Shown here: piece after piece, positions 7,530 to 51,598 of the stretch
Layout of the letters: each line of letters begins with the position of its first letter
Numbering within the stretch: position 1 is the first letter of the stretch
NCBI RefSeq assembly: GCF_036588685.1
Contig: NC_086384.1
Location: forward strand, 50,096,001 to 50,160,000
Source of the DNA: Mytilus trossulus
Taxonomy: Eukaryota
Length of the DNA: 64,000 nt
Direction of reading: 5' to 3'
Made by a program: the position numbers and the translations under genes
Notes under the pieces: generated by a model
What the model saw: the letters and a program-made list of their open reading frames with translations, nothing else
Told to the model about the DNA's origin: nothing
The model's database searches: none

Positions 7530-8769
7530 TGAAGGAAAGTGACTTTTTTCAATTAATGATGTTCAACAATTGTTGTTTCATTGTAAAAATGCATTGTCAG
7601 TCTAAAGCGTATGCAAAAAAAGTAAACATTAAGAACCTGCACGGTGGTACTATAGATATGATGAACACTATATTAACGAAAGGAATAAAAGAAACCACTT
7701 ACAGGTATGAGCAACAATTTTTCCTTAACAAAAATGTATTCAAAAATCTTTTTACAGACGGTCATATGTGTAAAATGTCATTATCGGTAAACGCTTATAT
7801 ATATTTTGATAAAATTTTTTTTTTAAAAAATGGCGTTTTAGGTCAAATACATGAGTTTGACAATTTATGAGAAGACTTCCCACAACAGTTTATGTACAAA
7901 TTATCGAGATTATTTTAACCTGTTCATTCAAATTAGCACAAAAGTCATAATTTTGAAATCCTTGAATATACTTACTATTTGTGCAATACAAAAGACTATT
8001 TCATTGCTCTGATATATAGTCTTTCTTTTTTTAAATTGGTGTTTATTGTGCAGGTAACTTCAGAAAAGTGCTTCGGCCACAACCCAATTTTGAAGTTTTA
8101 CTTTCATTTATACAAATTCTAGATTACTAGTTAACATCGGTTGTAATTATAAGAAAAATGTCACATCGTTTTTTTAAGCAGACATGCTTGAGTGTATGCT
8201 AATTATGTGTATGATACAAACCATCTCTGTTTATTTAAAGTTTTCATATTTTTATATCTTATCAGGACGTAGCTATATTGAATACAATGCAATGTCAGGA
8301 AATAATGTGAAGTAGAGCAATGGTCTTTGTTTTTCTTCCCATTTAAATACCACTTCTTTTTATCAATATTCAGATCAATATCTTAGTTTTTGAACATTAC
8401 CTTATATATCAGGTAATCAAGTACGTACAATTTGAAGAATAGGTTAAAATGAATGACACCATTTTAATACACGCATTCATCGAAATCCCGCCGTTATAAG
8501 AGCCCCTCCTTGTCTCTTTTATGTTTTACAAAAATGATTTGAAATGTCTTCTTTTAACAGTTTAAATGTTTTGTACAATGTGATAGATATAAAATATTGA
8601 ATGTACAACCCGAATATCATTTTGTATATGTCGTTGTCCATTAATTTGTACCAACCACGATACATGGAATCGAAAACTGTTTTCCCCACGCAAATAGATA
8701 TAAGAAGATTTGGTAGTATGAGTGCTAATGAGACAACTCTCCATCCAAGTCACAATTTATAAAAATAAT

Positions 8770-18657: not shown

Positions 18658-19152
18658 TGAAGGACAGTGTCGTGATGGCTTTTTCAATTTATACTATTCA
18701 ACAATTGTTGTTTCATTGTACAAAGGCATTGTCAGTCTTAAACGTATACAAATAAAGTAAACATTAAATTTCTGCACGGTGGTACTATATATATGATGAC
18801 CACTATATGAACGAAAGGAATGAAAGAAACAAATGACATCAAAATACGTCTAGATGTGCTTGCAGGTATGAGTAACAATTTATCTTAACACAAATGTATA
18901 TAAAAATCTTATTACAGACGATCATATGACTGTAAAAGTAAAATATCATTATCGGTAAACACTTATATAAACATGTATTTTTATAAAAAAATCTATAAAA
19001 TTGAAATTGCATTTTAGGTCAAATACATGAGTTTGACATTCCAGAAGAATTTATGAACAAATTATCGAGATTATTTGACCTGTTTTTTTTAAATTGAAGC
19101 AAAAGTCATAATTTTGAAATAGTAATCAAAGGTGTCAGGATTATAATTAAGT

Positions 19153-36358: not shown

Positions 36359-38319
36359 TTACGTGTTCATCTTCACAATAATTGCGGCAGAATTCTCCGA
36401 TTCATCCGGGTAGATTTTCAAAGACTGTAAGAAAGCTTGTCGTGCAGATTCCTTGTCGCCAAATAATTGTAAAGCAATTCCCAATAAAGTGTAGGCCTCC
36501 GCTGTACTCTTAAAATCTGCCATCAAATATCTTTCTCCTATAACAATTTTTAAATCTTGAATAGAATCCTGACAATGTCTAACATCATTGAGGTGATTAT
36601 GACAAAGAAAACTAAGGAAATAAGCATACGCTGTGGATGGAATATAATATATGTCATTGCATCCCTCTATTAAAAGTTCTTCTGGTGTTAACGTTGAATT
36701 CTCTGTTAATTGTATCAGATCTACGAACAGTATTTTCCGAAGACAAGCCACACTCGTCTTAAAGAATGACAGCAGTTTAAGTGACTGGTAATGGATATGT
36801 GACAGAGTCAATCCCAGAAACAGTTTATCGGAAGAACATTTTGATATAGAATACCTAATGATGTGTAAAGCTTTCCTGTATTGCTTTGTTTTGTAAAAAA
36901 ATGAAGCTACCATAAGCCATCCAGAAACAGCGTCATGATAGACATTTGTAAGAAGTGTACTCAAACAGGATTTGTACCGTTTGTATTGGTATTTATTATT
37001 GATAATTGCACCATAAAGTGGAAATCTTTGAGCTTGTTTACTGCATCGCTTTGATATGTAGTATGCATACAAGTGTTTTAATGAAAATTTATGACACCAT
37101 ATGCTGTGAAATAATCCGGGGTTGAATACATGTATATCTAACTCAGAATAAGTTTCGAAGATATCTATACCAACATGCAAAATTCTGGATTGCACTATTT
37201 TCTTAACGTCATTTACATATAATGTACATGGTTCAATTGGAATATTCCTTATCGATACAGTAAAGTTAGATATTTGATCTGAAAATAAAATGCATCGCCA
37301 ACCATAGCTGTGTAACGTGTTTAATTTTTTTAAAAGTACATCACGAGCACGACCGTCTATTTTGTTCTCGAACATGTTGTTTTCTGGAATGAAGTAATGT
37401 GAACAAACCGAATGCTCAACACAATAGACTAACCTGCTGAAACATCGCATAAAACAAGTTATAAGATTATCAGGTTTCCATACAGATGATGGTAGTTCTT
37501 CAGATATCCAGAACATAATTGTTTTAAGGAAATATGAACAGAGTAAATCTTTACATTCAGAATCATTTGATATAACATCTTTCAAAATTATTTTCAAGAG
37601 AGCATAGCACATTAATTGGGTGTGAGTAAATGTATTAATTAGAAGTTTTTCAGCTACTGAAAAAGATACTCGCCATTCTAGATCTTCTTTCGGTGATCCG
37701 TGAACTCCGACCGGTACAAAAAGTACTCCGTGTTTTATAATACTTTGTATGACGTTATGACTCGGCCATGAGCTACCTGATCTTGTTATCCAATTTACAG
37801 CAGAAGATATCCACATTTTACCATGTAAAGAAAAGGCATGATCAAAAAATCCATTTCTGTCAGATATACACGGTCCATGAATTTGGTTGCCTTCTTTCAA
37901 TACCAATAACATATTTCCCTTACATAATGCACTAGAAAAATAACGTTTACCATAATGTTCTTCACATAATTGAAAAAGACGAAACGAATCTCTGCTATAG
38001 TCTAGTCTTAATAAAGTATAACAAGGCTTTACATCGTCTGTATCCATGGACAAATAAGGTCTACGTATATCAAAGTCAGGTTGTACATTTTCAATAACCT
38101 CAACGAATTTGCTCACAAACATAATATCAAAATCACTTCCTCGCATGTCAAGTCCTTCTCCAATGCTTCCACTTGTTATTACTGTTTCCTTCTTGTTATT
38201 CGACAAATTGTCTCTCACCATGTTCATTAATCTGATTGTTTTAACATGCTTTTCCGTTCCTACGATATTTTGACATAAATGGCGGTAAAGAGCTTGTGAT
38301 ATGTTTGGTATTATAATAT
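36359..38319 (-). CDS. cGAS-like receptor (cGLR; Mab-21 nucleotidyltransferase with C-terminal TPR-like helices), main coding exon
   Basis: NTase signature SGSIGEG...SDFDIM, candidate third acidic residue FFDHAF, EWRVSFSVAEK and LCSYFLKT Mab-21 motifs, HYFIPENNMF, TPR-like AYTLLGIALQLFGDKESARQAFLQSL. The frame stays open 92 nt upstream of the ORF-track Met to a phase-1 acceptor (tttctaattacAG, 38320-38321). Confidence 0.92.
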
Positions 38320-38892
38320 CTGTAATTAGAAAATTAAAACAAACATGGTAAGAACATAATTTTGTTCAAGGTATATATCATAAAAAACTGTACATTTATG
38401 ATGCCTTCACTAGTTTTATTGACAGTTAAGTTCTCCAAAGTATAAACAATTATTTGTTTTGAACGTTAAACTTAAATCAAACGAGATATTAATATGCAGA
38501 TGATGTATTATACACTTATTAGTAAAGTAAAGTTCAAAATAATTGAAATTGATCAGGGAAAAACTCTTAAATACATAAGAGGACTAATACATTGATATGA
38601 ATTAATTAGAGACATGAATAAAACGGAATGTTTGAAAATTTATTTATTCTTTCGTACAGTAAAAAACGTTTTTGATTCATACTTTTCTCTTATATTGATT
38701 TTACCATTCTTTTTTTCAAAACTCCTATAAAAGTATTTATGACCCTTTTATTTTTCATACTTAAAGTCGTGCAAAATTGACCTACTTTGATTGAATTTTT
38801 TATAATATTTTGTTTTAAAGTAATCTCTCCCTGAATTGCTAAGTTGGAAAGATTGTTTTCTACAAAACCAAATATCTGTTTTTTTTTCAAAT

Positions 38893-40185
38893 ATACTAGT
38901 ACTATAAAAGAAACGATACACGATTTTTTGTTCAAATCAAAGATACATTTTTCCTTTTATAGGACCAATATTGAAGGTAGACATATTTAATGACCATGGT
39001 AATACAAATATGTTTAAAGCAATTTTGTTTTGCTTTCATGACGTCACTTGGCGAAATTTAAACTTTTTGACAAAATTTTCATAAAACCACAATTTTAAAA
39101 ACAGAAGTTCCAACTAATGATGACATTCTCATATTTAGAGGTAAAGACAACGTGTGCCATCTATTCTTTTTTCAAATAATACAGTTTCTTCGTTTATTTG
39201 TTTAGAAATCGTAAAAATGCATACATTATCAAATGATTTACCATAGACAGTATGTGTTAAGTGAAATTCAAAAAACGGTTTCAATCTTTAAACTAATCAG
39301 AATGGTTCCAAATTTATAGTGTGTTGTTTTCATATCTAAAGCGTTGATTTGAGACGAATTGTTTTTGGCATTTTTTGAGATTTCAAAAAAACTCTTTTTT
39401 TACCAAAAATTAAAAAAAAACATTATTTTAACCGATTTGTTACAACATGAACATGACTTGAATAGCATATTGAATATTTTTAAACAAATTAGAAAATTCA
39501 TTTAGTACTTAGAACATTGTTTGTCGATTTTTTATCCAACTTTCTGCAAAAATAATTTGCACCCTATGTTCATTTACACGGAATTTAGTTACTTTCCGAC
39601 AGGTTACAAGTTTCATTATCGTATGTGCATAAATAAAGGCAACAGTAGTATACCGATGTTCAAAACTCATAAATCGATAGAAAAAAAAACAAATCTGGGT
39701 CATAAACCAAAACCGAGGGAAACGCATTAAATACAAGAAAATGACGACACAACATTAAAATGTAACACACACAGAAACGAACTAAGCATTAGACAAAATC
39801 CGATGCAAATAACAAATATAAAATCAAAACTAAATACATGAATTTGGGATAAAAAAATTACCGTGACACGTTTTATAATAATGTGAATTCACACTCGAAT
39901 ACAAGAGGAAACAAACGACACAAAAGAAACACAACGTTAAAATGTTACACACACAGAAACGAACTATAATATAACAAAGACCATATTCCTGACTTGGTAC
40001 AGGACATTTTTTAAAGAAAAAATGGTGGGTTGAACGTGATTTTTTGGCATGCCAAGCCTTGCAAATGAAAATACATTGCAAATGAAAGCTTTTTAAAATG
40101 GTGTGTCTCAATTTGTTTCATATTTTATACTTTTTGATAAATTTATTCCAAAGTCGTGTATCGTTTCTTTGTTAGTTAGTATACT
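38893..40185. mobile_element. TIR element in the cGLR intron, with a nested interspersed repeat (~39630-40060)
   Basis: aaagaaacgatacacga / tcgtgtatcgtttcttt inverted ends; the nested repeat recurs at ~59085-59320 and, inverted, at ~42150-42275. Confidence 0.6.
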
Positions 40186-41587
40186 AGTTTAAACATTGCA
40201 TAAAAAAATTGTGTTTCAGTGTTTAAAAAACTGTGTCAAACATTGTTTGCCAATCTGTCAAAATATTTACAGATTTAAACAAAGAACTAAACCTTATTAT
40301 GTAATGCTATCATACACCTAATCATCGTGATTAATAGTTAAATCATCTCAAAATAGCCTAACCTGTTAATATTTTGTTTACAATATAAATAAGTCATTTG
40401 TAAGCTATGGTGATGAAATTTCCTTTAAATTATATTTTTTATGTGAACACAGAATAGTATAAAATAAAAAGTTGCTCATACTCATTTCAAAGTTTGAAAG
40501 AATATACAAATTAACGTTGTTGCTAAACTACAATCTCGCAAGCCTGTTTTTATCTAGGTGCGATATGTGTTTTTCTGTAAAATCTATGTTCGTTCCTATT
40601 TTAAACAGACGTTCTAATGATTCCGAATACGCCATATACTTTAACTTTGTAATTTGGTTATAAATGGCAAGAAACATTGCAAATGGAGTATTTTTCAAAC
40701 TACCTCAAGATATAAATAATTGTGTTTAAATACATGGTAATTCATATGTAAAGTTGTGGATATAAAATCGAGTTCTCTTTTATATGAAATAGAAAGTTCC
40801 ATACACAATATCGTTCTGTATACAAAACCATTCGAAAGTGAAAAAAAATAGTTTAGATGTGCTAACATGTACATATAATACATTCACTGACCTATCTTGA
40901 ACTCCAAGGGAAATTCAAAACGGAAAATCTATAATCAAAATGCAAAATCAAAACCGCAAACACATCAAATATATAGATATTAATTGTCATAGTCCTGACT
41001 TGGTACAGATATTTTCTTATGAAGAAAATGATGGATTGAAACTAGTTTTATAACTACCTAAACGTGTCACTTTTATGAAAGTTGCACAAAATGACCATAT
41101 TTTGTCAACAATGTGTGAACAAAACAAAGAGACATATCAGCTGAAAATGTCAGAAATAGCGGTACATCAGTCAATAACAAATATGTCAACAAAGAAACAC
41201 AAAAAGGCATATAGACAAAGCACATCAGCAACACTAAAAAAATAATCAAAGGAAGATGACGGGTTGTGATAATGATGTATTTGAGATAATTCATGTGTTT
41301 TAATCTATTCGTGGTTTTAAGATATTAGAACTTAAAAAGATTAATATATGATTTTTTTTTATATGAAATAAATTTAAAATGTTTACCTTTTATTCTCTTA
41401 TTCTGTTATATACATATGGGGCTGATCCGTGGATATTCGTAATATTTGCTTTCGTTTCCAATTTTAATAATATGTAATGTACAACAAGTACACAAGATTT
41501 TACATTAAAAAAAAAAACAGCCGTTGGTAACTATTCTATCCCATTATTAATAAGATTGTCTATGTAAATTAAAGTTGAAATGTTTAC

Positions 41588-41602
41588 CTTCCATTGTCTC
41601 AG
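41588..41602 (-). CDS. Candidate cGLR start micro-exon 2 (ctgagacaATGGAAG|gtaaac)
   Basis: The phase-1 donor matches the phase-1 acceptor at 38319, giving M-E-D-I-I-I-P. Confidence 0.6.
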
Positions 41603-41902
41603 CTTGTTGTAGGAATGTGTTTTCCCGTAATATCAACTTTCGTTTTTATTTGAATTACACGTAGTTATAGCACCTACGCAATACTTTATAATTTGCATTT
41701 AAAACCCCAGGTATATCAAACATGGTGAAAAGGAAAGCTAAGAAAAAAAAATGTGTACACACGTGGCAAATTAGGTATTAGTGTGTTTGTTTATCTTCAT
41801 ATTACACTTTAATATATGTCTGTTTACATGAACAGCAGACTGTTACTATTTTATCACATTATGTTTAAATTTGTTGTTTTAAATTAAAGGTAAATTGTTT
41901 AC

Positions 41903-41918
41903 CTGCCATCCTTTCAGC
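41903..41918 (-). CDS. Candidate cGLR start micro-exon 3 (gctgaaaggATGGCAG|gtaaac)
   Basis: Phase-1 donor; paralogous to micro-exon 2; gives M-A-D-I-I-I-P. Confidence 0.6.
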
Positions 41919-42401
41919 CTGTTATAAGATTTTATATGAAATGTGTATTTCCGTTATACCAACTTTCGTTTCCATTTAACTTAAACCAACTGATAACACC
42001 TGTATGTAGACAAAACTATTTTGTAATTTGCATTCAAAAACTCAGGTACATTACACATTGTGACAAACTAAAATATCAATAAAAAATGTGTACACACGGG
42101 GAGAATTAGGTTGTATATAGATCTTGTTAACAGATCTGGTTTATATATCGGGTTTGTGTCGTTGTTCTCCTCTTATAGTTGATGTGTTTCCCTCAGTTAT
42201 AGTTTGTAACCCGGATTTGTTTTTTTCAATCGATTTATGAACTTTGGGCAGCGGTATACTACTGTTTTTTTATTTATGTTACTGTTGATATTTAAGTTAT
42301 TCAATATTTTGTAACATAGGCAGCAATTCATAATTAATAATAGTATATTAAAGATTAAAATGCCTTAATAGTTATCAAAAGTACCAGGATTATAATTTAG
42401 T

Positions 42402-42445
42402 ACGCCAGACGTGCGTTTCGTCTACATAGGACTCATCAGTGACGC
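42402..42445 (-). ncRNA. Type I hammerhead ribozyme motif (intact core)
   Basis: gcguca CUGAUGA guc cuaugua gac GAAAC gcac GUC|uggcgu. Confidence 0.82.
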
Positions 42446-43876
42446 TCATATCAAAATAGTTATAAAGCCAAACAAGTACAAAGTTGAAGAGCATTGAGTA
42501 TCTAAAATTCCAAAAAGTTTTGCCAAATACGTCTAAGGTAAAACCTACCTAAGAATGTGAATAAACACATTTAGAGTTGGAGTTACACATCTGCCTTATA
42601 TTGATTCTAGATAGGTTCCTTATAAATAATTTATAAGTTTACAGTTTAGAGAAGGAAGTAGGTAAATTAGAACAGATCATTAATTATTTTGTCAAACCAT
42701 TGATAACATGACAAGATATGTAAGTGATAATGTCAAACTTATGTGCACACATAATGTTTCTGGGAGGGATAAATGGAACTTTTTAAAACATCACTTCGTT
42801 AACATTCTATAAAATAAGATAAACGATGACAATATGTGCATTTCGACTATTAGTGTCTCGTCTAGGATGCTCAGTTAAATATTTAAATATTACTAAGTTT
42901 GCAAAGATTTAAGATTTAAAAGTGCCCAACTCATCAGATCACTTCAATGAAGAAAAAACATTTAACAAAAGCGCACACTGGTAGAGGAGTCCGGGCAGTT
43001 TAATGATTTTTATAGATTAATATACGCAAAAATAAACATTTCGAACACAACATTAAGGGTGGGGTGACACATATCAAAAGGGGAGAAAATAAAAAAAAAC
43101 ATGTAACAATTGACACAAAATATGTATAATACAACATAAAGGATGTTAATATCGAAGAACGGCAAAACTGAAAACCTTCTACTTTTTTCAGTGACCGCCT
43201 TCAACACGTTGAAGTTTATGTCACTTGACAACCTCATATGAGAATTGACAAGAAACAAGCAAATACAGTCTTCAAAGCATAAAATAGTACAAACGATGAA
43301 GCAAAACGGACTTGGTACTCGGAACTCAAATCTGACTTTACATGTCCAATCCCTTCTGAAGACACATATTTGATATTGACAAAAGTTAAGATTGATTGCA
43401 CAATAACCAAAAACGTGTTTGTTTAAATTGAATACTTGAAATCTGCAGCTGGCATTTCAGTAACTGCTAGTAGTTTTTGTTGATTTATGTATTTTTATCA
43501 ATTTGCTTAGCTTTTTTTGTTACCTTTTCTGACATCGGACTCGATCTCCCTTAAAACTGAGTTATACTGTGCGTATTGTTGTGTTTATGATTCTTATAAA
43601 TTGACTAGAGGAATAGGGAGTTTAGATCTTACAAAACATGTTTAATCACGCCGCGTTATTGCGCCTGTCCAAAGTCAGGATCCTCTATCTCTTGTTAGTC
43701 TTGTATGTTCTTTAGTTATAGTTCATTTATGTTTGGAGTTTAATATGACGTCCATTTTCACTGAAGTAGAACATTTTTTTTATTTAGAAGGCAGCTAAAT
43801 CCCGCCTCAAGGTGCAGAATGGTTTTCGCTGTGTTGAAGACCCATTGGTGGACTTCGGATGTTATGCATTAGAATC

Positions 43877-46540: not shown

Positions 46541-49029
46541 ATGATTCTTTCTCAACTTTTGTCGTTTCTTTGGATTATATGTGTCAGTTCCCATTTTATG
46601 TGTTACCGAATCATTGTGATATTACATTAACTAAAAAAGGACATAAGATGTAACTGCAGCTCAATGGATTTAACACATATACCAGCAGATTGCCCATCAA
46701 ACACAACAAGTTTATATTTGTCTAATAATAATCTGGACATTATATCAAGGAAAGCTTTCACTAAATATGCAGAGCTTAGATATCTGGATATAAGTGGTTG
46801 TCATATGACAACAATCGACCAATCAGCATTTGATAATTTATCACATTTAAAAGAACTGAGAATGTCACCACTAGATGATCTACAAGTACTTCATATATCA
46901 CATGACTTGCTGTCAACGTCTTCAAAAGAGTCGTGGTCGGATTTTCATAATATAACAAAAGTGTTTAGTTATGGTGGACCGTCAAATGGGTCGTTTGCAG
47001 AGATATTTCTGTGATGAAAAATCTGAAGTATTTACATAGTCGTATTCAAATTCATGTTCTACGTAAATGTACGTTTCATGCCTTTGCAGAAACGCCATTA
47101 AAATATCTAGAGGTAAACGGCCATTTAATGACGATAGAAAAAGATACTTTTTAACCATTAACATTTCTTTCCAGTCTTGTAATTCCAATTGCACGTTTCC
47201 TAAAACTATCAAATACTTTGCCAGCTTTGCACGTGTTCAAAAAACGTCAAATGGATGAACTAAATTTAAACAATAATTTCAGAGTACACGGTGAATTCAT
47301 TGTAACAACTGATTTATTTACATATATCGGTTACATTTGTGTGAAGAAATTATCTTTGACCTTCAATGGCATAAAAATTATCAATGCTGACGCAGTTCAG
47401 AAGATGAAATATAAACATTGTTTTGAGAGTTTAAACTTAAGTAACAATGACTTTGATTTTCACCAGTTGTTAACAATATGGTTTTTCAATTTGTTTACAC
47501 ATCTGAAGACATTAGACATGTCGGATAACAACATTCAATTTAATCAAAATAAAGTTAAGATAGATGGAATTAAACATACACGTGATAATTATGATCTATC
47601 TGATAATGAATCCTTTAACATCATTCCCTCATATTATCCTCCAGATATTGTATCATGGTTTCCTTCGACACTTGAAATCCTGAATATATCTTGTATCAAC
47701 GTAGTAGGGAACCCAATCAACAGCCTTACATTTAAAGAAATCAAAGACCTGCAAATAATTGATTCATCATACTATTCATTGTTTGACTGCAATTACACAT
47801 TTAACGGACTTCAGGACGTGTTAATACTTAATGTTTCACATTTCAAATGCGGACTTTTAAATCACAACCTTCTACAATCTGCCGTCAATTTGGAACAGTT
47901 GATAATGCAAAGCTCTTCACTATGTATCGGCCTAAACAATGATCACCACTGTCAATTCCTCCATGGACTCAAACGTTTACAGTATATAGACTTTTCAAGA
48001 AATGCATTTGAAGACCGATTTAGAATTTCAACATTTAAAAGTCAACTTGATAGTTTGCAATATTTGATACTTGAAGGAAATTTATTCACAAGTATTCCAT
48101 TATGTCTGGAAGACTTTAACATATTAAGTTTTCTAAATATTAGAAACAACAAGATAGCCTACTTGACAACTGAGGAAATTGACGCCATTGAAGTGCTTTA
48201 CAGAAAATCAAATAGAACAGTGAAAGTCTTATTAGATGGCAACCCTCTTGTATGTACTTGTGCTTCATTAGATTTTGTAGAATGGTTATTTACTACTAAA
48301 GTGAAACTTGACAGCAATGGTAGTTATTCGTGTGTCGGAAACGATGGAAATATTACAACAACAAATACAATTTACAATGACTTACGAATTATGCGAATAA
48401 GATGTATAACAACAGTTTGGTTAATTTTTTCTGCAACATTATTCTGTATGCTTCTATTGTTTATTCTAGTTGGATATCGTTACAAATTGCACCTACAATA
48501 CTTTCGTCTATTCATCGGAATGGCCAATCCACTTTTCCGGAAGTCAAAAGGAGAGACACTTGAATATGATGTATATGTAGCTCATTGCGATGGCGACTAT
48601 ACATGGGTTTATGGACCTTTGCGCATATTTCTTGAAGAGAGACGAAATTATAAACTTCTACTATTAGAAAGAGGTGATGTTCTTGCTGGAGAACCTAGAC
48701 ATTTTACTTTATACAATGCCATTCCAAAATGCAAAAAGATAATCTTAGTAATTTCAAAAGAGTTTGTTAACAATGATTGGGCATACTATGAAGGTATTGT
48801 TGGAATTGAACATTTTCTAGGATTACAAGCAAAAATAATTGTTATAAACCTAGAAAATATAACCAAAACAGAAATACCGCAATGTGTTCTTCAAATGATG
48901 TCATTGAACGCCAACAACCACATTCGTAAAACAGACACATTAAATGAAAAAAAACATTTTCTGGCAATGTTTAGATCAAGCAATGAAACATTAATGAAAG
49001 ACAGTGTTATTATGGCTCTTTTCAATTGA
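46541..49029 (+). pseudogene. TLR pseudogene TLR-E (frameshifts and a deletion in the first ~700 bp, +1 in an A-run near the end; 47218-48950 still open)
   Basis: The ATG at 46541 frameshifts after the signal peptide; pieces 46664-47014 and 47218-49029; terminal IFW.CLD is read out of frame. Confidence 0.88.
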
Positions 49030-49671
49030 TGCTATTAAACAATAGTTTGCATTGCACTCATGCTTTGTCAGTGTAAAGCATATGTAAATAACGTAGACAT
49101 TAAAAACCTGCACGGTGGTACTGAAGATACGATGACAACTATATTTGTCAAAGGAACAAAATAAACCTTTGATATTAAAATACGGCTAGATGGGCTTGAA
49201 GGTATGAGCAACAACTTTCCCATAACAAAAATATACTACTAAAATTTGTTTTACCAAGATGATGTTATGTGTAAAATATCATTGTCGGTAAATCGCTTAT
49301 ATATATTTTGACTAAAAACGTTGCTTGAAACGACATTTTGGTCAATATACGTGAATTTTATTACTATTTTAGAGTATTTTACAACGTGTCATCACACGTA
49401 ACTTTCTTTGCAAATGTATCGAGACTATGTTAAACTGTTTATTAAAATGTAACACAAAAGTAATCCTTGAATAAACTGACTATTTATGCAAAGACTAATT
49501 CCTTGATCTTATCTCATGTTTTACTTTTTTTTGGAATTTGGCGTCTATGATGCAGGTAATTCCAGACAAGTGCTTTAGACACAACCTATTTTTGAAGTTT
49601 TCCTTTCATTTATATAAATTCTATATAACTAGTTACAACAGTTATCAAGGGTACCAGGATTACAATGTAAT

Positions 49672-49715
49672 ACGCCATACGCGCGTTTCGTCTTCATTAG
49701 ACTCATCAGTGACGC
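49672..49715 (-). ncRNA. Type I hammerhead ribozyme motif (intact core, GUA triplet)
   Basis: gcguca CUGAUGA gucu aauga agac GAAAC gcgc GUA|uggcgu. Confidence 0.8.
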
Positions 49716-51598
49716 TCAGATCAAAATAGTTTTATAGCCAATTAAGCACAAAGTTGAAGAGCATTCCGGACCCAAAATTTCAAAATACGGCTAAGGTAAT
49801 ATATTCCTGGGATAATAAAGTCCTTAGTTTTTGAAAAAAAAATTGTTACAGGAAATTTATAAATATATACAAATAATTGTATTTAAATGAAAAAATACTA
49901 TTTCACATAATTTTGTCAAACAGACATGCTTGATTGTATGCTTATCATGTGTATGATACGAACCATATCTGCTTTTTTAAAGATTTAATAATTTTACATT
50001 TGAAAAAAAAGTAGCTATATTGCATTCAATACAAGGTCAGAAATGTATGTGAAGTAAAGCGATTTTCTTTGTAATACCACTTCTGTATAGCAATATTCAA
50101 ATAAAATATCTTACTCATTAAACATTACCTTATTCAACTGGTTAGAGAAGAAAGATTTAAGTAATACAGCAAATGCCTACACTTTGATTGGAATTGCTTA
50201 CTTTGTTTCATGTTGAATGCTCGTTTACGTTTTTCAAAGCCCTCGAAACTTCCCGTATTGGTCCATCGCACTTTAGCGTGATATACTGCCGTACAGTATA
50301 TTAGCAACCAAACAACCATCGAATTTTAGCGTGAGACTACGCCATACTTGAGTGTAGACCATTGCACTTCACCGTAGCCATCGCACCTTAGAGTCCTACA
50401 TATACTAGTATAATATGTGTTGATGTAACTAATGTAATCTGTTGATGTATAGGGTAGCTTAATTTTGGAACCTTAAATCTTAAAATACCACTTAACAGAT
50501 AGTCATTTTATATAAAATAAAATGTGTATTTCATTCTTTATTGAAAATTGTCTCACTGATGTACGAATTTATACTCCTTAAACTACAATTACTCAATCTT
50601 TTGTAAGCGAACTATTGGGCTATTCCAGAATTAGTCTGTCCCCCCCCTATGGAAGACATTGGAATTCCAGATTTTTTTTCCTTTATTTTTTCTAAAATTC
50701 CAAACAAATTTTCCATCTGGACAAAAAAAATCCAAACTTTTTGTCTATTGGTGCACAAGAAATTCCATGTAATTTTCAAAGGGGCGAATAATTTCCAGAA
50801 ATTTTTTACTGATATTCATTAAGATTTTCCAGAACAGAAATATTTGGTGACCCATTATTTCCAGGTATATTACACAAGAGTATTGATCAATTCCCCATGT
50901 ACATGTATAAACATGAAAAGACTTCAAAATAATGGGGGAGGGGCAAAGATCTGACACTGTCAGCAATAGTAGTTAAGAGAGCAGGAGCATTCAAAATATT
51001 GTACTGTTTTCAATTACGGTAGCTATTACACTGATAAAATTTAAATAAACCATGTATATGCCTCTTTTGGGGGTATACCGTATATAATATTCAAGATATA
51101 GATTGATAAAGTTATGCTTCCACTAGTATTATAACATGCGTATTGATTGATTAATATATTGTTTGAGAAATAAATAAACATCAATAGATAACATGAAGTA
51201 TAGATAAAGAGAGACAATAGAAAACAAGAAGTAAAGATAAAAAGAAAGAATAGAAAACAAGAAGTATAGAAAAATAGCAAGTAAAATAGATCACATGGTG
51301 TCGGGCCCCTTATTAATATCAGTAATTTATATTATGAATATAAGTGTCAAGAATGGCTTGGGCTCCTGACGATGGACATGGCCATGGTCAATTAGTTGAT
51401 TCTAATTGGTCTAAATAGATGTTCGAAACACCTAGTGATCTATGGAGTTGGGGTGCTGGGATAGGATATGATAACGATTTATTGAAATTTTAAAAAATCT
51501 ACATATACATGTTATACATTACAGTAAAAATATAGAAAAGCGGGTCTTGGCCATTTTATGGTTTACTTTTAAATCAAAAGATGAAACCAACACGTTTC

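What the first reader, a model, noticed from the sequence alone, without database searches (positions are those of the whole stretch)
41365..42110. Triplicated start-micro-exon module with ISRE/GAS motifs feeding the cGLR
Seen: three tandem homologous units 3-3.6 kb upstream of the cGLR main exon. Each has an AG-bounded 15-16-nt segment ending AG|GTAAAC. Units 3 and 2 end in ATG GCA G and ATG GAA G (phase 1, exactly fitting the acceptor at 38319); unit 1 (41387-41402) has lost the ATG. Splicing 3 to 2 to main stays in frame (MAAETMEDIII), whereas including the 16-nt unit 1 would frameshift. Each unit retains an IRF-element-like CTTTCGTTT 35-55 nt upstream despite divergence around it, and unit 2 has TTCCCGTAA, a GAS/SIE-type STAT site. 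Inference: duplicated inducible promoters/alternative first exons, possibly with a poison exon, making this cGLR an interferon-stimulated-like gene in an invertebrate.
Basis: partly seen in the sequence, partly recalled or inferred. Interest (0 to 1): 0.78.

Follow-up and report, generated by a model that had tools for sequence, protein, structure and literature searches.

The report
Triplicated start-exon promoter of mussel cGLR
Three tandem copies of a small promoter-like block ending in a start-codon mini-exon sit upstream of a mussel immune-sensor gene; the copies and a conserved immune-type DNA motif are real, but whether they switch the gene on during infection is untested.

Summary
On the minus strand of a Mytilus trossulus window, three diverged tandem units (70-78% alike) lie 3.07-3.58 kb upstream of the single large exon of a Mab-21/cGLR-TPR gene. 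Each unit ends in ...AG|GTAAAC. Unit 3 ends ATG GCA G, unit 2 ends ATG GAA G, and unit 1 has ATA in place of ATG.

The public protein model of this gene (XP_063409066.1) starts MAD and is otherwise identical to the window's exon. That start fits unit 3 spliced directly to 38319, so the start exon is already annotated.

The same module sits upstream of all seven other paralogues I examined in the cluster (19 units). Relatives occur in distant subfamilies, so it is the family's usual 5' module, multiplied in tandem.

An IRF-core motif (GAAACGAAAG type) about 60 nt before the ATG is enriched family-wide. The proposed STAT site is not conserved. Its position matches a GGAAA/kappaB-like element in other subfamilies.

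The AGs upstream of the mini-exons lack pyrimidine tracts, which favours first exons with their own promoters over internal micro-exons or a poison exon.

RNA evidence is missing: the two raw RNA runs laid had zero depth on the gene. Inducibility therefore stays inferred. I rate this a new member of a known kind, of moderate interest.

The parts
36359..38319 (-). Main (single large) coding exon of the Mab-21/cGLR-TPR gene, stop codon included. The acceptor is cag|AT at 38320/38319.
   Evidence: ORF and translation. Pfam Mab-21_C 3.2e-18, Mab-21 4e-5 (24.2 bits against a 24.1 cut-off) and TPR hits at the C-terminus. 652 of 652 residues identical to residues 4-655 of XP_063409066.1. Related to solved cGLR1 and cGAS chains, E 3.5e-14 and 1.7e-12.
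41871..42111 (-). Unit 3: a promoter-like block plus a mini first coding exon. The segment is 41918-41903, ATG 41909-41907, donor GT 41902-41901. This is the annotated start (M-A-, then G+AT = D).
   Evidence: (the only ATGGCAGGT in the window). u3-type copies occur in P4, P5, P6 and P7.
41963..41973 (-). GGAAACGAAAG of unit 3. It holds the IRF core AANNGAAA, with the two GAAA repeats 1 nt apart.
41556..41790 (-). Unit 2: an intact second copy. The segment is 41602-41588, ATG 41594-41592, donor GT 41587-41586. Spliced to 38319 it would give M-E-D.
   Evidence: No transcript evidence was obtained.
41637..41644 (-). AACGAAAG of unit 2 (in context, AAAAACGAAAGT).
41622..41630 (+). On the gene strand it reads TTACGGGAA, part of the conserved TATTACGG(G/A)AA block. 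It starts 18 nt after the start of AACGAAAG.
   Evidence: The exact 9-mer is in 1 of 7 u2-type units.
41365..41500 (-). Unit 1: a decayed copy. The segment is 41402-41387 with ATA in place of ATG, the donor GTAAAC is kept, and AACGAAAG lies at 41449-41456.
   Evidence: The u1 type reads ATG ACA G in P2, P3 and P8, and ATA or ATT in P1, P4, P5 and P6.
41244..41386 (-). Flank downstream of unit 1, shared only with the paralogues of this cluster. This is the start of the 3.07-kb stretch of intron between unit 1 and the main exon.
41175..41241 (-). Fragment of a dispersed repeat. It marks the point where similarity to paralogue P2 drops from 88-99% to about 70%.
   Evidence: 1192 candidates genome-wide.

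Best explanation
The region is a tandem triplication of the family's standard 5' module. That module is a promoter-like block of about 110-150 nt followed by a very short first coding exon. The exon holds a few untranslated bases plus ATG-NNN-G, and is spliced in phase 1 to the one large exon.

Unit 3 is the start used in the annotated model (MAD...). Unit 2 is an intact spare or alternative start (MED...). Unit 1 is a dead copy. The u3-u2-u1 arrangement is older than most gene duplications in this 500-kb cluster, and it has been reshuffled among paralogues.

Each live unit carries an IRF-core GAAA motif about 60 nt before the ATG. A GGAAA-type (Rel/kappaB-like) block follows 18 nt after the motif's start. 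The most likely function is therefore IRF/Rel-type immune-responsive transcription from alternative promoters.

Shown: the anatomy, the annotated use of unit 3, the family-wide module and the motif enrichment. Inferred: the transcription start inside each unit, the use of unit 2, factor binding and inducibility.
For: Start exon:
- ATGGCAGGT is unique in the window.
- 16 of 24 fetched homologues start M-(A/T/E)-(D/E), then the conserved exon.

Family module:
- 19 units lie upstream of 8 of 8 examined paralogues on this contig. All are on the gene strand, 3-14 kb from the main exon.
- Three units are present in P1, P4, P5 and P6.
- 13 of 19 units keep both ATG and GT.

Motif:
- AACGAAAG is in 13 of 19 units, against a background of 0.003 per 60 nt.
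- The genome pattern AACGAAAG-N30-60-ATGNNNGGTAA gives 40 matches against 24 for the reversed control. At least 17 lie upstream of family exons, 9 in this cluster and 8 elsewhere. The spacers of those elsewhere are unrelated in sequence.
- I chose 11 distant genes by their main exon only. Of their 11 start-exon candidates, 7 have AANNGAAA at -90..-31 (background 0.061, P = 8e-7). Four of the 11 have GAAA-N1-2-GAAA (background 0.011, P = 4e-6).

First exon rather than internal exon:
- The pyrimidine fraction before the unit AGs is 0.50 (n = 18). Before the main acceptors it is 0.68 (n = 8, P = 4e-5). Background is 0.49.
- Unit L031 has no AG within 47 nt of its ATG.

Plausibility:
- IRF, Rel-homology and STAT DNA-binding domains are encoded in this genome.
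- Bivalve IRFs bind ISRE (PMC13524488, passages).
- Oyster CgcGAS mRNA rises 13-fold after poly(I:C) (PMC8218723, passages).
Against: - No transcript evidence was obtained. Raw RNA runs X21 and X24 have zero depth on 37750-38346. None of the four predicted junctions is among the 15 joints listed, though 17 more were not shown.
- Within the cluster the units are no better conserved than neutral DNA. u3 units are 84-90% alike among P1, P4, P5 and P6, or 72-90% with P7. u2 units are 75-93% alike. The main exon is 84-88% alike, and 400 nt of proximal intron is 86-89% alike for P1 against P3, P6 and P8. Within the cluster, shared descent is enough to explain the motif.
- The motif survives in 3 of 6 dead units against 10 of 13 intact ones, which is no clear difference (by eye).
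- The exact 8-mer is in 0 of 6 units from the first six genes of the motif-blind sample.
- The two GAAA repeats are 1 nt apart, not the 2 nt of the classical ISRE (consensus recalled from memory).
- No kappaB consensus (GGRRNNYYCC) is present in the window's three units.
- The CAG just before each segment is conserved in 18 of 19 units. That also fits a splice acceptor.
- The annotated model is a computed prediction, and I could not see its RNA support.
Confidence: 0.55

Rival explanations
1. The mini-exons are internal micro-exons. A non-coding first exon and the real promoter lie further upstream, for instance in the conserved block 42539-43173. The conserved sequence before each segment would then be intronic splicing control. 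Chained or alternative inclusion (3>2>main, with unit 1 as a poison exon) would tune the output.
For: Each segment in the window is bounded by AG, and CAG or AAG is kept in 18 of 19 units. Some distant units have fair pyrimidine runs before CAG, such as L041 and L026. A block upstream of the module (42539-43173) is shared with P2, P3, P4 and P5. Joining 3>2>main keeps the frame in P1, and also in P4 and P5, where the u2 segment is 15 nt.
Against: There is no pyrimidine enrichment before the unit AGs (0.50 against 0.68 at real acceptors). Segment length varies from 11 to 16 nt, so chaining would not keep the frame in P2 or P3. L031 has no AG for 47 nt. The annotated protein is MAD, not the chained form. 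No reads cover the upstream block (bins 42725-43122 have zero depth in the raw runs).
Confidence: 0.2
2. Only one unit matters. Units 2 and 1 are neutral leftovers of a tandem duplication, and the GAAA and GGAAA blocks are inherited sequence without factor binding. The gene would then be driven constitutively or in a tissue-specific way, not by infection.
For: Unit divergence within the cluster is no lower than that of intron DNA. Six of 19 units are visibly dead, and 3 of those still hold the 8-mer. The DNA is AT-rich (GC 0.28-0.33), which makes GAAA-type words fairly common: AANNGAAA has a 0.061 chance per 60 nt.
Against: The motif class is enriched at a fixed distance in distant subfamilies whose spacers no longer align. 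A second GAAA directly precedes the selected 8-mer in 8 of 9 family-type units found genome-wide, and is absent from the likely chance hit L035. kappaB consensus sites sit at a fixed 17-nt offset in 3 of 10 such units, against a background of 0.015.
Confidence: 0.2
3. One reading: a JAK-STAT plus IRF (ISGF3-like) interferon-stimulated promoter, with a working GAS/SIE site in unit 2.
For: TTCCCGTAA is present at 41622-41630. It equals a high-affinity SIE variant as I recall it. One STAT DNA-binding domain locus exists in the genome. An oyster interferon-like receptor activated ISRE, STAT3 and GAS reporters (PMC8218723, introduction passage).
Against: The 9-mer is in 1 of 7 u2-type units and in no u3 or u1 unit. 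It is not the palindromic TTCNNNGAA (recalled). The conserved letters at that place are ACGG(G/A)AA, which fit a Rel or ETS-like half-site better.
Confidence: 0.05

Closest known systems
Arrays of alternative first exons, each with its own promoter, spliced to common downstream exons (for example clustered protocadherins and UGT1A; recalled, not tested here)
   Same: Tandem, homologous units of promoter plus first exon. Each ends in a donor that fits one shared acceptor, and some copies have decayed.
   Different: There are only three copies. The exon contributes just Met-X and one base, so the protein barely changes and only regulation could differ. Use of more than one unit is not shown.
IRF/NF-kappaB-driven pattern-recognition genes, including inducible cGAS homologues (oyster CgcGAS is induced by poly(I:C), PMC8218723; mammalian cGAS as an interferon-stimulated gene is recalled)
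   Same: An immune sensor gene of the cGAS/cGLR family with IRF-core motifs close to its start. Other subfamily members have kappaB consensus sites beside the same motif.
   Different: The GAAA repeats are 1 nt apart rather than in the classical ISRE spacing. The window's units hold no kappaB consensus. No binding or induction data exist for this gene.
Expanded bivalve cGLR (Mab-21) family with TPR C-terminal architecture (Li et al., PMC9980059, passages and figure legend seen)
   Same: A Mab-21 core plus TPR. The gene family shows a huge radiation: 817 first-look candidates in this genome, 68 of them scored.
   Different: In the passages I saw, that paper treats proteins, not gene structure or promoters. 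Its Tables S1 and S2 (supplements closed) may list Mytilus members.

Membership tests
cGLR / Mab-21 (cGAS-like) protein family, for the gene the module feeds | Mab-21 nucleotidyltransferase core and Mab-21 C-terminal domain | tested here: met
   PF20266 3.2e-18. PF03281 4e-5, at 24.2 bits against a 24.1 cut-off. cGLR1 chain 8gjy_A at E 3.5e-14 and cGAS chains at about 2e-12.
cGLR / Mab-21 (cGAS-like) protein family, for the gene the module feeds | Complete active site (G-S ... [DE]h[DE] plus a third acidic residue) and nucleotide-signal synthesis | tested here: inconclusive
   GSIGEGLDMRGSDFDIMF is visible in the translation. The third acidic residue was not mapped, and the solved-structure alignments start after residue 160. 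Enzyme activity cannot be tested here.
Alternative first-exon / promoter array | Several homologous units, each ending in a donor compatible with one common acceptor | tested here: met
   Units 3 and 2 end ATG NNN G|GT in phase 1, and the acceptor is at 38319. Thirteen of 19 cluster units are intact.
Alternative first-exon / promoter array | Each unit has its own transcription start, and more than one unit is used | not testable with these tools
Only the use of unit 3 is implied, by the annotated MAD model.
Internal micro-exon / poison exon | A functional 3' splice site (pyrimidine tract plus AG) before the segment | tested here: not met
   The pyrimidine fraction is 0.50 before the unit AGs, 0.68 before the main acceptors and 0.49 for background. 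No AG lies within 47 nt in L031.
Internal micro-exon / poison exon | Inclusion seen in transcripts | not testable with these tools
   No spliced reads were obtained.
ISRE / IRF-binding element | IRF core AANNGAAA (consensus recalled) | tested here: met
   AAACGAAA is in all three window units, and AANNGAAA is in 12 of 19 cluster units. It is in 7 of 11 start-exon candidates of the distant genes chosen blind to the motif, P = 8e-7.
ISRE / IRF-binding element | Tandem GAAANNGAAA with 2-nt spacing (classical ISRE, recalled) | tested here: not met
   Units 3 and 1 read GAAA-C-GAAA, with 1-nt spacing, and unit 2 reads AAAA-C-GAAA. Two-nt spacing is seen only in some relatives (P4, P5, P6 and P7 units, L026, L037).
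ISRE / IRF-binding element | Bound by an IRF and needed for induction | not testable with these tools
   IRF domains are encoded at four loci in the genome. No binding data exist.
GAS / SIE STAT site | TTCNNNGAA-type palindrome (recalled), conserved among copies | tested here: not met
   TTCCCGTAA occurs only in unit 2 of this gene, that is 1 of 7 u2-type units and 0 of 12 others.
NF-kappaB (Rel) site | GGRRNNYYCC consensus (recalled) | tested here: not met
   No match in the window's three units. Three of 10 distant units match at a fixed offset of 17 nt. The window keeps only GGGAAA or GGAAA at offset 18.

The most novel reading that the evidence does not exclude
Hundreds of Mytilus cGLR paralogues may share one compact regulatory cassette. 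It would consist of a CGTAGGTG block, an IRF-core GAAA motif, a Rel/kappaB-type site 17-18 nt after the motif's start, an initiator-like CAGGCT and an ATG-NNN-G mini first exon.

The cassette would be repeatedly multiplied in tandem and swapped between paralogues by recombination, since the module tree and the gene-body tree disagree. The expanded sensor family would then be wired into a feed-forward loop: cGLR to STING to IRF/Rel and back to cGLR transcription. Different unit combinations would give each paralogue its own induction profile.
Probability: 0.3. Interest if true: 0.65.

Novelty: new member of a known kind. Interest (0 to 1): 0.42.

Why it matters
Bivalves carry hundreds of cGLR genes, and almost nothing is known about how they are switched on. 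A short, recognisable 5' cassette shared across the family would give three things.

- A way to correct gene models. Many public models start at an internal Met or read through the intron.
- A concrete DNA element to test with mussel IRF and Rel proteins.
- A handle on how tandem duplication and recombination diversify regulation in an expanding immune gene family.

For this single gene the practical result is modest. The start exon is already in the public annotation, and the spare copies may be idle.

Tried and rejected
- **Tandem Repeats Finder.** It did not report the units. The repeat finder did.
- **RNA evidence.** Two raw RNA runs (X21, X24) gave zero depth on the main exon, so the junctions could not be tested.
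  - X1 contigs cover the exon only up to 38157.
  - The X7 contig called record 11 ends exactly at the acceptor with 59 unplaced letters. X7 also covers introns and may hold DNA, so I do not count it as a splice.
  - The peaks at 39541-40137 and 42327-42541 are dispersed repeats, not this gene.
- **Pattern with a fixed 80-nt lead.** It was meant to list start exons without using the motif. It gave 288 matches against 195 for the control, but the output was cut to the first 100 places and 80 letters, so it was not usable.
- **TATA reading.** TATAAAA lies 27 nt before the ATG of unit 3. It is absent from unit 2 and variable in relatives, so I did not rely on it.
- **Selective constraint within the cluster.** It is not demonstrable, because the units diverge as fast as intron DNA.
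- **Transposable element.** I rejected this for the units themselves: DNA search finds them only next to family genes on this contig. A true repeat fragment lies beside them at 41175-41241.
- **Rfam.** Nothing passes the gathering score in the window. There is only a sub-threshold hammerhead hit, outside the units.
- **Literature.** Searches 'Mytilus'+'cGLR', 'cGAS-like receptors'+'bivalve' (32), 'Mytilus'+'IRF'+'ISRE'+'promoter' (33), 'Mab-21'+'Mytilus' (48), 'ISRE'+'cGAS'+'oyster' (50) and 'bivalve'+'alternative first exon'+'promoter'+'immune' (51) found no paper describing this module. This covers only the held library. Supplementary tables were closed.
- **Joined model.** I did not build or search a joined (spliced) protein or cDNA. 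The short N-terminal readings (MAD, MED, the chained form) were worked out by hand from codons. The database protein P0121 was used as it stands.
Full report
**What is there.** The window is part of contig C12 (60,198,110 bases) of a 1.3-Gb genome. It is Mytilus trossulus. A public M. trossulus protein sits on a contig of exactly that length and is identical to the window's exon over 652 of 652 residues.

The gene lies on the minus strand. One large exon, 36359-38319, encodes a Mab-21/cGLR core with a TPR tail. Its acceptor is ...aattacag|AT at 38320/38319.

Three homologous units lie 3.07, 3.27 and 3.58 kb upstream. Each ends in a short AG-preceded segment followed by GTAAAC.
- Unit 3 ends ATG GCA G (ATG at 41909-41907).
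- Unit 2 ends ATG GAA G (ATG at 41594-41592).
- Unit 1 reads ATA AAA G.

**The start exon is real and already annotated.** The protein XP_063409066.1 (LOC134692539, 655 aa) reads M-A-D and then the window's exon. ATGGCAGGT occurs once in the 64-kb window, at 41901-41909 on the minus strand. It skips units 2 and 1.

Of 24 homologues whose sequences I fetched, 16 begin M-(A/T/E)-(D/E) followed by the conserved exon. Three begin at the internal Met, and five have other N-termini. One of those five is an intron read-through and one is a TIR-domain fusion. An ATG-NNN-G start exon in phase 1 is thus the family rule.

**The module is a family feature, and the triplication is old.** The family is huge: 817 first-look candidates, of which 68 were scored, all as single ~640-aa exons. 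Seven paralogues lie within 500 kb on the same strand. Every one has the module 3-14 kb upstream of its exon.

A profile of the exon-plus-donor core finds 19 units in the 8 genes. They fall into three types.
- **u3:** ...GGAAACGAAAGTTGG...ATGGCAG|GTAAAC.
- **u2:** ...AAAACGAAAGTTGA...ATGG(C/A)AG|.
- **u1:** ATG ACA G in P2, P3 and P8, but ATA or ATT in P1, P4, P5 and P6.

P1, P4, P5 and P6 have all three types. In P4 and P5 an insertion puts about 3.7 kb between u3 and u2. Thirteen of the 19 units keep both ATG and GT.

Gene body and module have different histories. P1 and P2 are 93% alike in the exon and 99% alike in the proximal intron. Yet P2 lacks u3, and its units group with P3. P1's u3 groups with P4 and P5 (90%), and its u2 groups with P6 (87%). 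The break lies at a dispersed-repeat fragment, 41175-41241. One distant paralogue (L040) also has two tandem units 533 nt apart. Another first-stage note reports two modules per cGLR elsewhere in this genome (I tested that only through L040).

**First exon or internal micro-exon?** The AG before each segment is conserved in 18 of 19 units, but it has no pyrimidine tract. The pyrimidine fraction at -23..-4 is 0.50 there. It is 0.68 for the eight main-exon acceptors (P = 4e-5) and 0.49 before any AG in these regions.

Segment length varies from 11 to 16 nt, so chained splicing would not keep the frame in P2 or P3. In one distant unit (L031) no AG occurs for 47 nt before the ATG. Across subfamilies the conserved letters there are CAG(G/A)CT, 12-20 nt before the ATG. 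That fits an initiator-like start as well as it fits an acceptor.

I therefore prefer the reading "promoter plus very short first exon" at about 0.6, against "internal micro-exon" at about 0.2. This remains inference.

**The motifs.** AACGAAAG occurs 8 times in the window against 2.45 expected, and 0 of 100 shuffles reached 8. Three of the eight are the units. It is in 13 of 19 cluster units.

Genome-wide, AACGAAAG-N30-60-ATGNNNGGTAA gives 40 matches against 24 for the reversed control. Nine are in this cluster. At least eight more lie 2-16 kb upstream, on the same strand, of family exons on contigs C5, C8 and C14. Their spacers no longer resemble those of this cluster. In 8 of 9 family-type units a second GAAA directly precedes the selected 8-mer. 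It is missing in L033 and in the likely chance hit L035.

Because that set was chosen by the motif, I also took 11 distant genes chosen only by their main exon, 89.4 kb of upstream DNA in all. Eight of these genes have a non-stop ATGNNNG|GTA candidate, 11 candidates in total, and roughly five would be expected by chance. Seven of the 11 have AANNGAAA at -90..-31 (background 0.061, P = 8e-7). Four have GAAA-N1-2-GAAA (background 0.011, P = 4e-6). In the first six of these genes, none of the six candidate units has the exact 8-mer.

So an IRF-core element at a fixed distance is a family trait, but a loose one. It matches the IRF core AANNGAAA. In units 3 and 1 it also matches GGAANNGAAA. It does not have the 2-nt spacing of the classical ISRE. 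All of these consensus sequences are recalled from memory.

The proposed STAT site does not hold up. TTCCCGTAA is in 1 of 7 u2-type units and in no other unit. What is conserved there is TAT(T/A)ACGG(G/A)AA, starting 18 nt after the start of AACGAAAG. At offset 17 in three units of other subfamilies sit textbook kappaB sites (GGAAAGTCCC, GGGGAATCCC, GGGAAGTCCC). The background for such a site is 0.015 per unit. One of these units is 2.06 kb upstream of a family exon. The window's own units have no kappaB consensus.

The genome encodes IRF domains at four loci, Rel-homology domains at two loci and a STAT DNA-binding domain at one locus.

**Evidence against a functional reading.** Within the cluster the units diverge as fast as, or faster than, intron DNA. 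The motif persists in 3 of 6 dead units and in 10 of 13 live ones (by eye).

No RNA evidence was obtained. In two raw RNA runs the main exon had zero depth, and no predicted junction was among the joints listed. One observation remains unexplained. In run X24, 49 reads lie on the flank just below unit 1 and all leave the window's sequence exactly at 41387.

**Comparison with what is known.**
- Bivalve cGLR radiations and the TPR architecture are published (PMC9980059, passages).
- Oyster CgcGAS is induced 13-fold by poly(I:C) within a cGAS/STING-TBK1-IRF axis (PMC8218723, passages).
- Bivalve IRFs bind ISRE (PMC13524488, passages; PMC5869526, figure legend).
- Arrays of alternative first exons are a known kind of gene structure (recalled).
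- My six library searches found no description of this 5' module or of cis-elements of mollusc cGLR genes. Supplementary tables were closed.

**Verdict.**
  - Supported: duplicated start modules and an IRF-type motif.
  - Not supported: the STAT site and the poison micro-exon.
  - Untested: inducibility.
- This is a new member of a known kind, of moderate interest. The main value is the family-wide cassette it points to.
- I built no joined (spliced) sequence and sent none to any tool.

Noticed in passing
window 42367-42541 (hit at 42402-42445, minus); another copy about 49640-49883: A repeat of about 175 nt, 250-640 nt upstream of unit 3, has enormous RNA depth in all four runs. It holds a sub-threshold type I hammerhead ribozyme match (30.5 bits against a gathering score of 34, E 6e-5). 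Copies also lie upstream of paralogues P4, P5, P6 and P8. It may be a retrozyme-like element (that name is recalled).
   Followed up: partly
window 7675-7682 and 18810-18817 (+): Two homologous stretches near the window's TLR genes carry AACGAAAG followed by a GAAA-rich run and then CAG|GTATGAG. They may be IRF-type motifs beside TLR first exons.
   Followed up: no
window 41283-41387: In RNA run X24, 49 reads cover the flank below unit 1. All of them continue beyond 41387 into one agreed sequence that differs from the window's, while the gene's exon has zero depth. This is unexplained. It could be a diverged copy read through unspliced, or a structural variant.
   Followed up: partly
window 36382-41246 against G000:C12:50337586-50342264 (L013): The closest paralogue P2 is 93% alike in the exon and 99% alike in the proximal intron, but only about 70% alike from 41244 upward. 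It lacks unit 3 and has an in-frame TAG. This suggests recent gene conversion or recombination that spared the 5' modules.
   Followed up: partly
protein P0016 (M. edulis, 824 aa): This homologue carries a TIR domain joined N-terminally at the same main-exon boundary. So the shared acceptor can take exons of a neighbouring TIR/TLR gene, at least in a predicted model.
   Followed up: no
window 47401-47712: A tandem repeat with a 66-nt unit is conserved upstream of paralogues P2 and P3, which carry many more copies.
   Followed up: no
L016/L017 and L018/L019 (paralogues P4, P5): In both paralogues unit 3 and unit 2 lie about 3.7 kb apart, against 315 nt in the window. I did not identify the inserted DNA.
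   Followed up: no
L027, L028, L029 (G000 C8:41491432, C14:53252995, C14:77431033): Start-exon units of other cGLR subfamilies combine GAAACGAAAGT with a perfect kappaB site 17 nt after the start of AACGAAAG. A TAAATA-type box lies about 30 nt before ATGGCAG|GT.
   Followed up: partly
proteins P0001, P0017, P0021, P0014: Several public models of this family start at the internal Met or read through the intron (MFYHVCFKFLIT...). That suggests the mini start exon is often missed by annotation.
   Followed up: no
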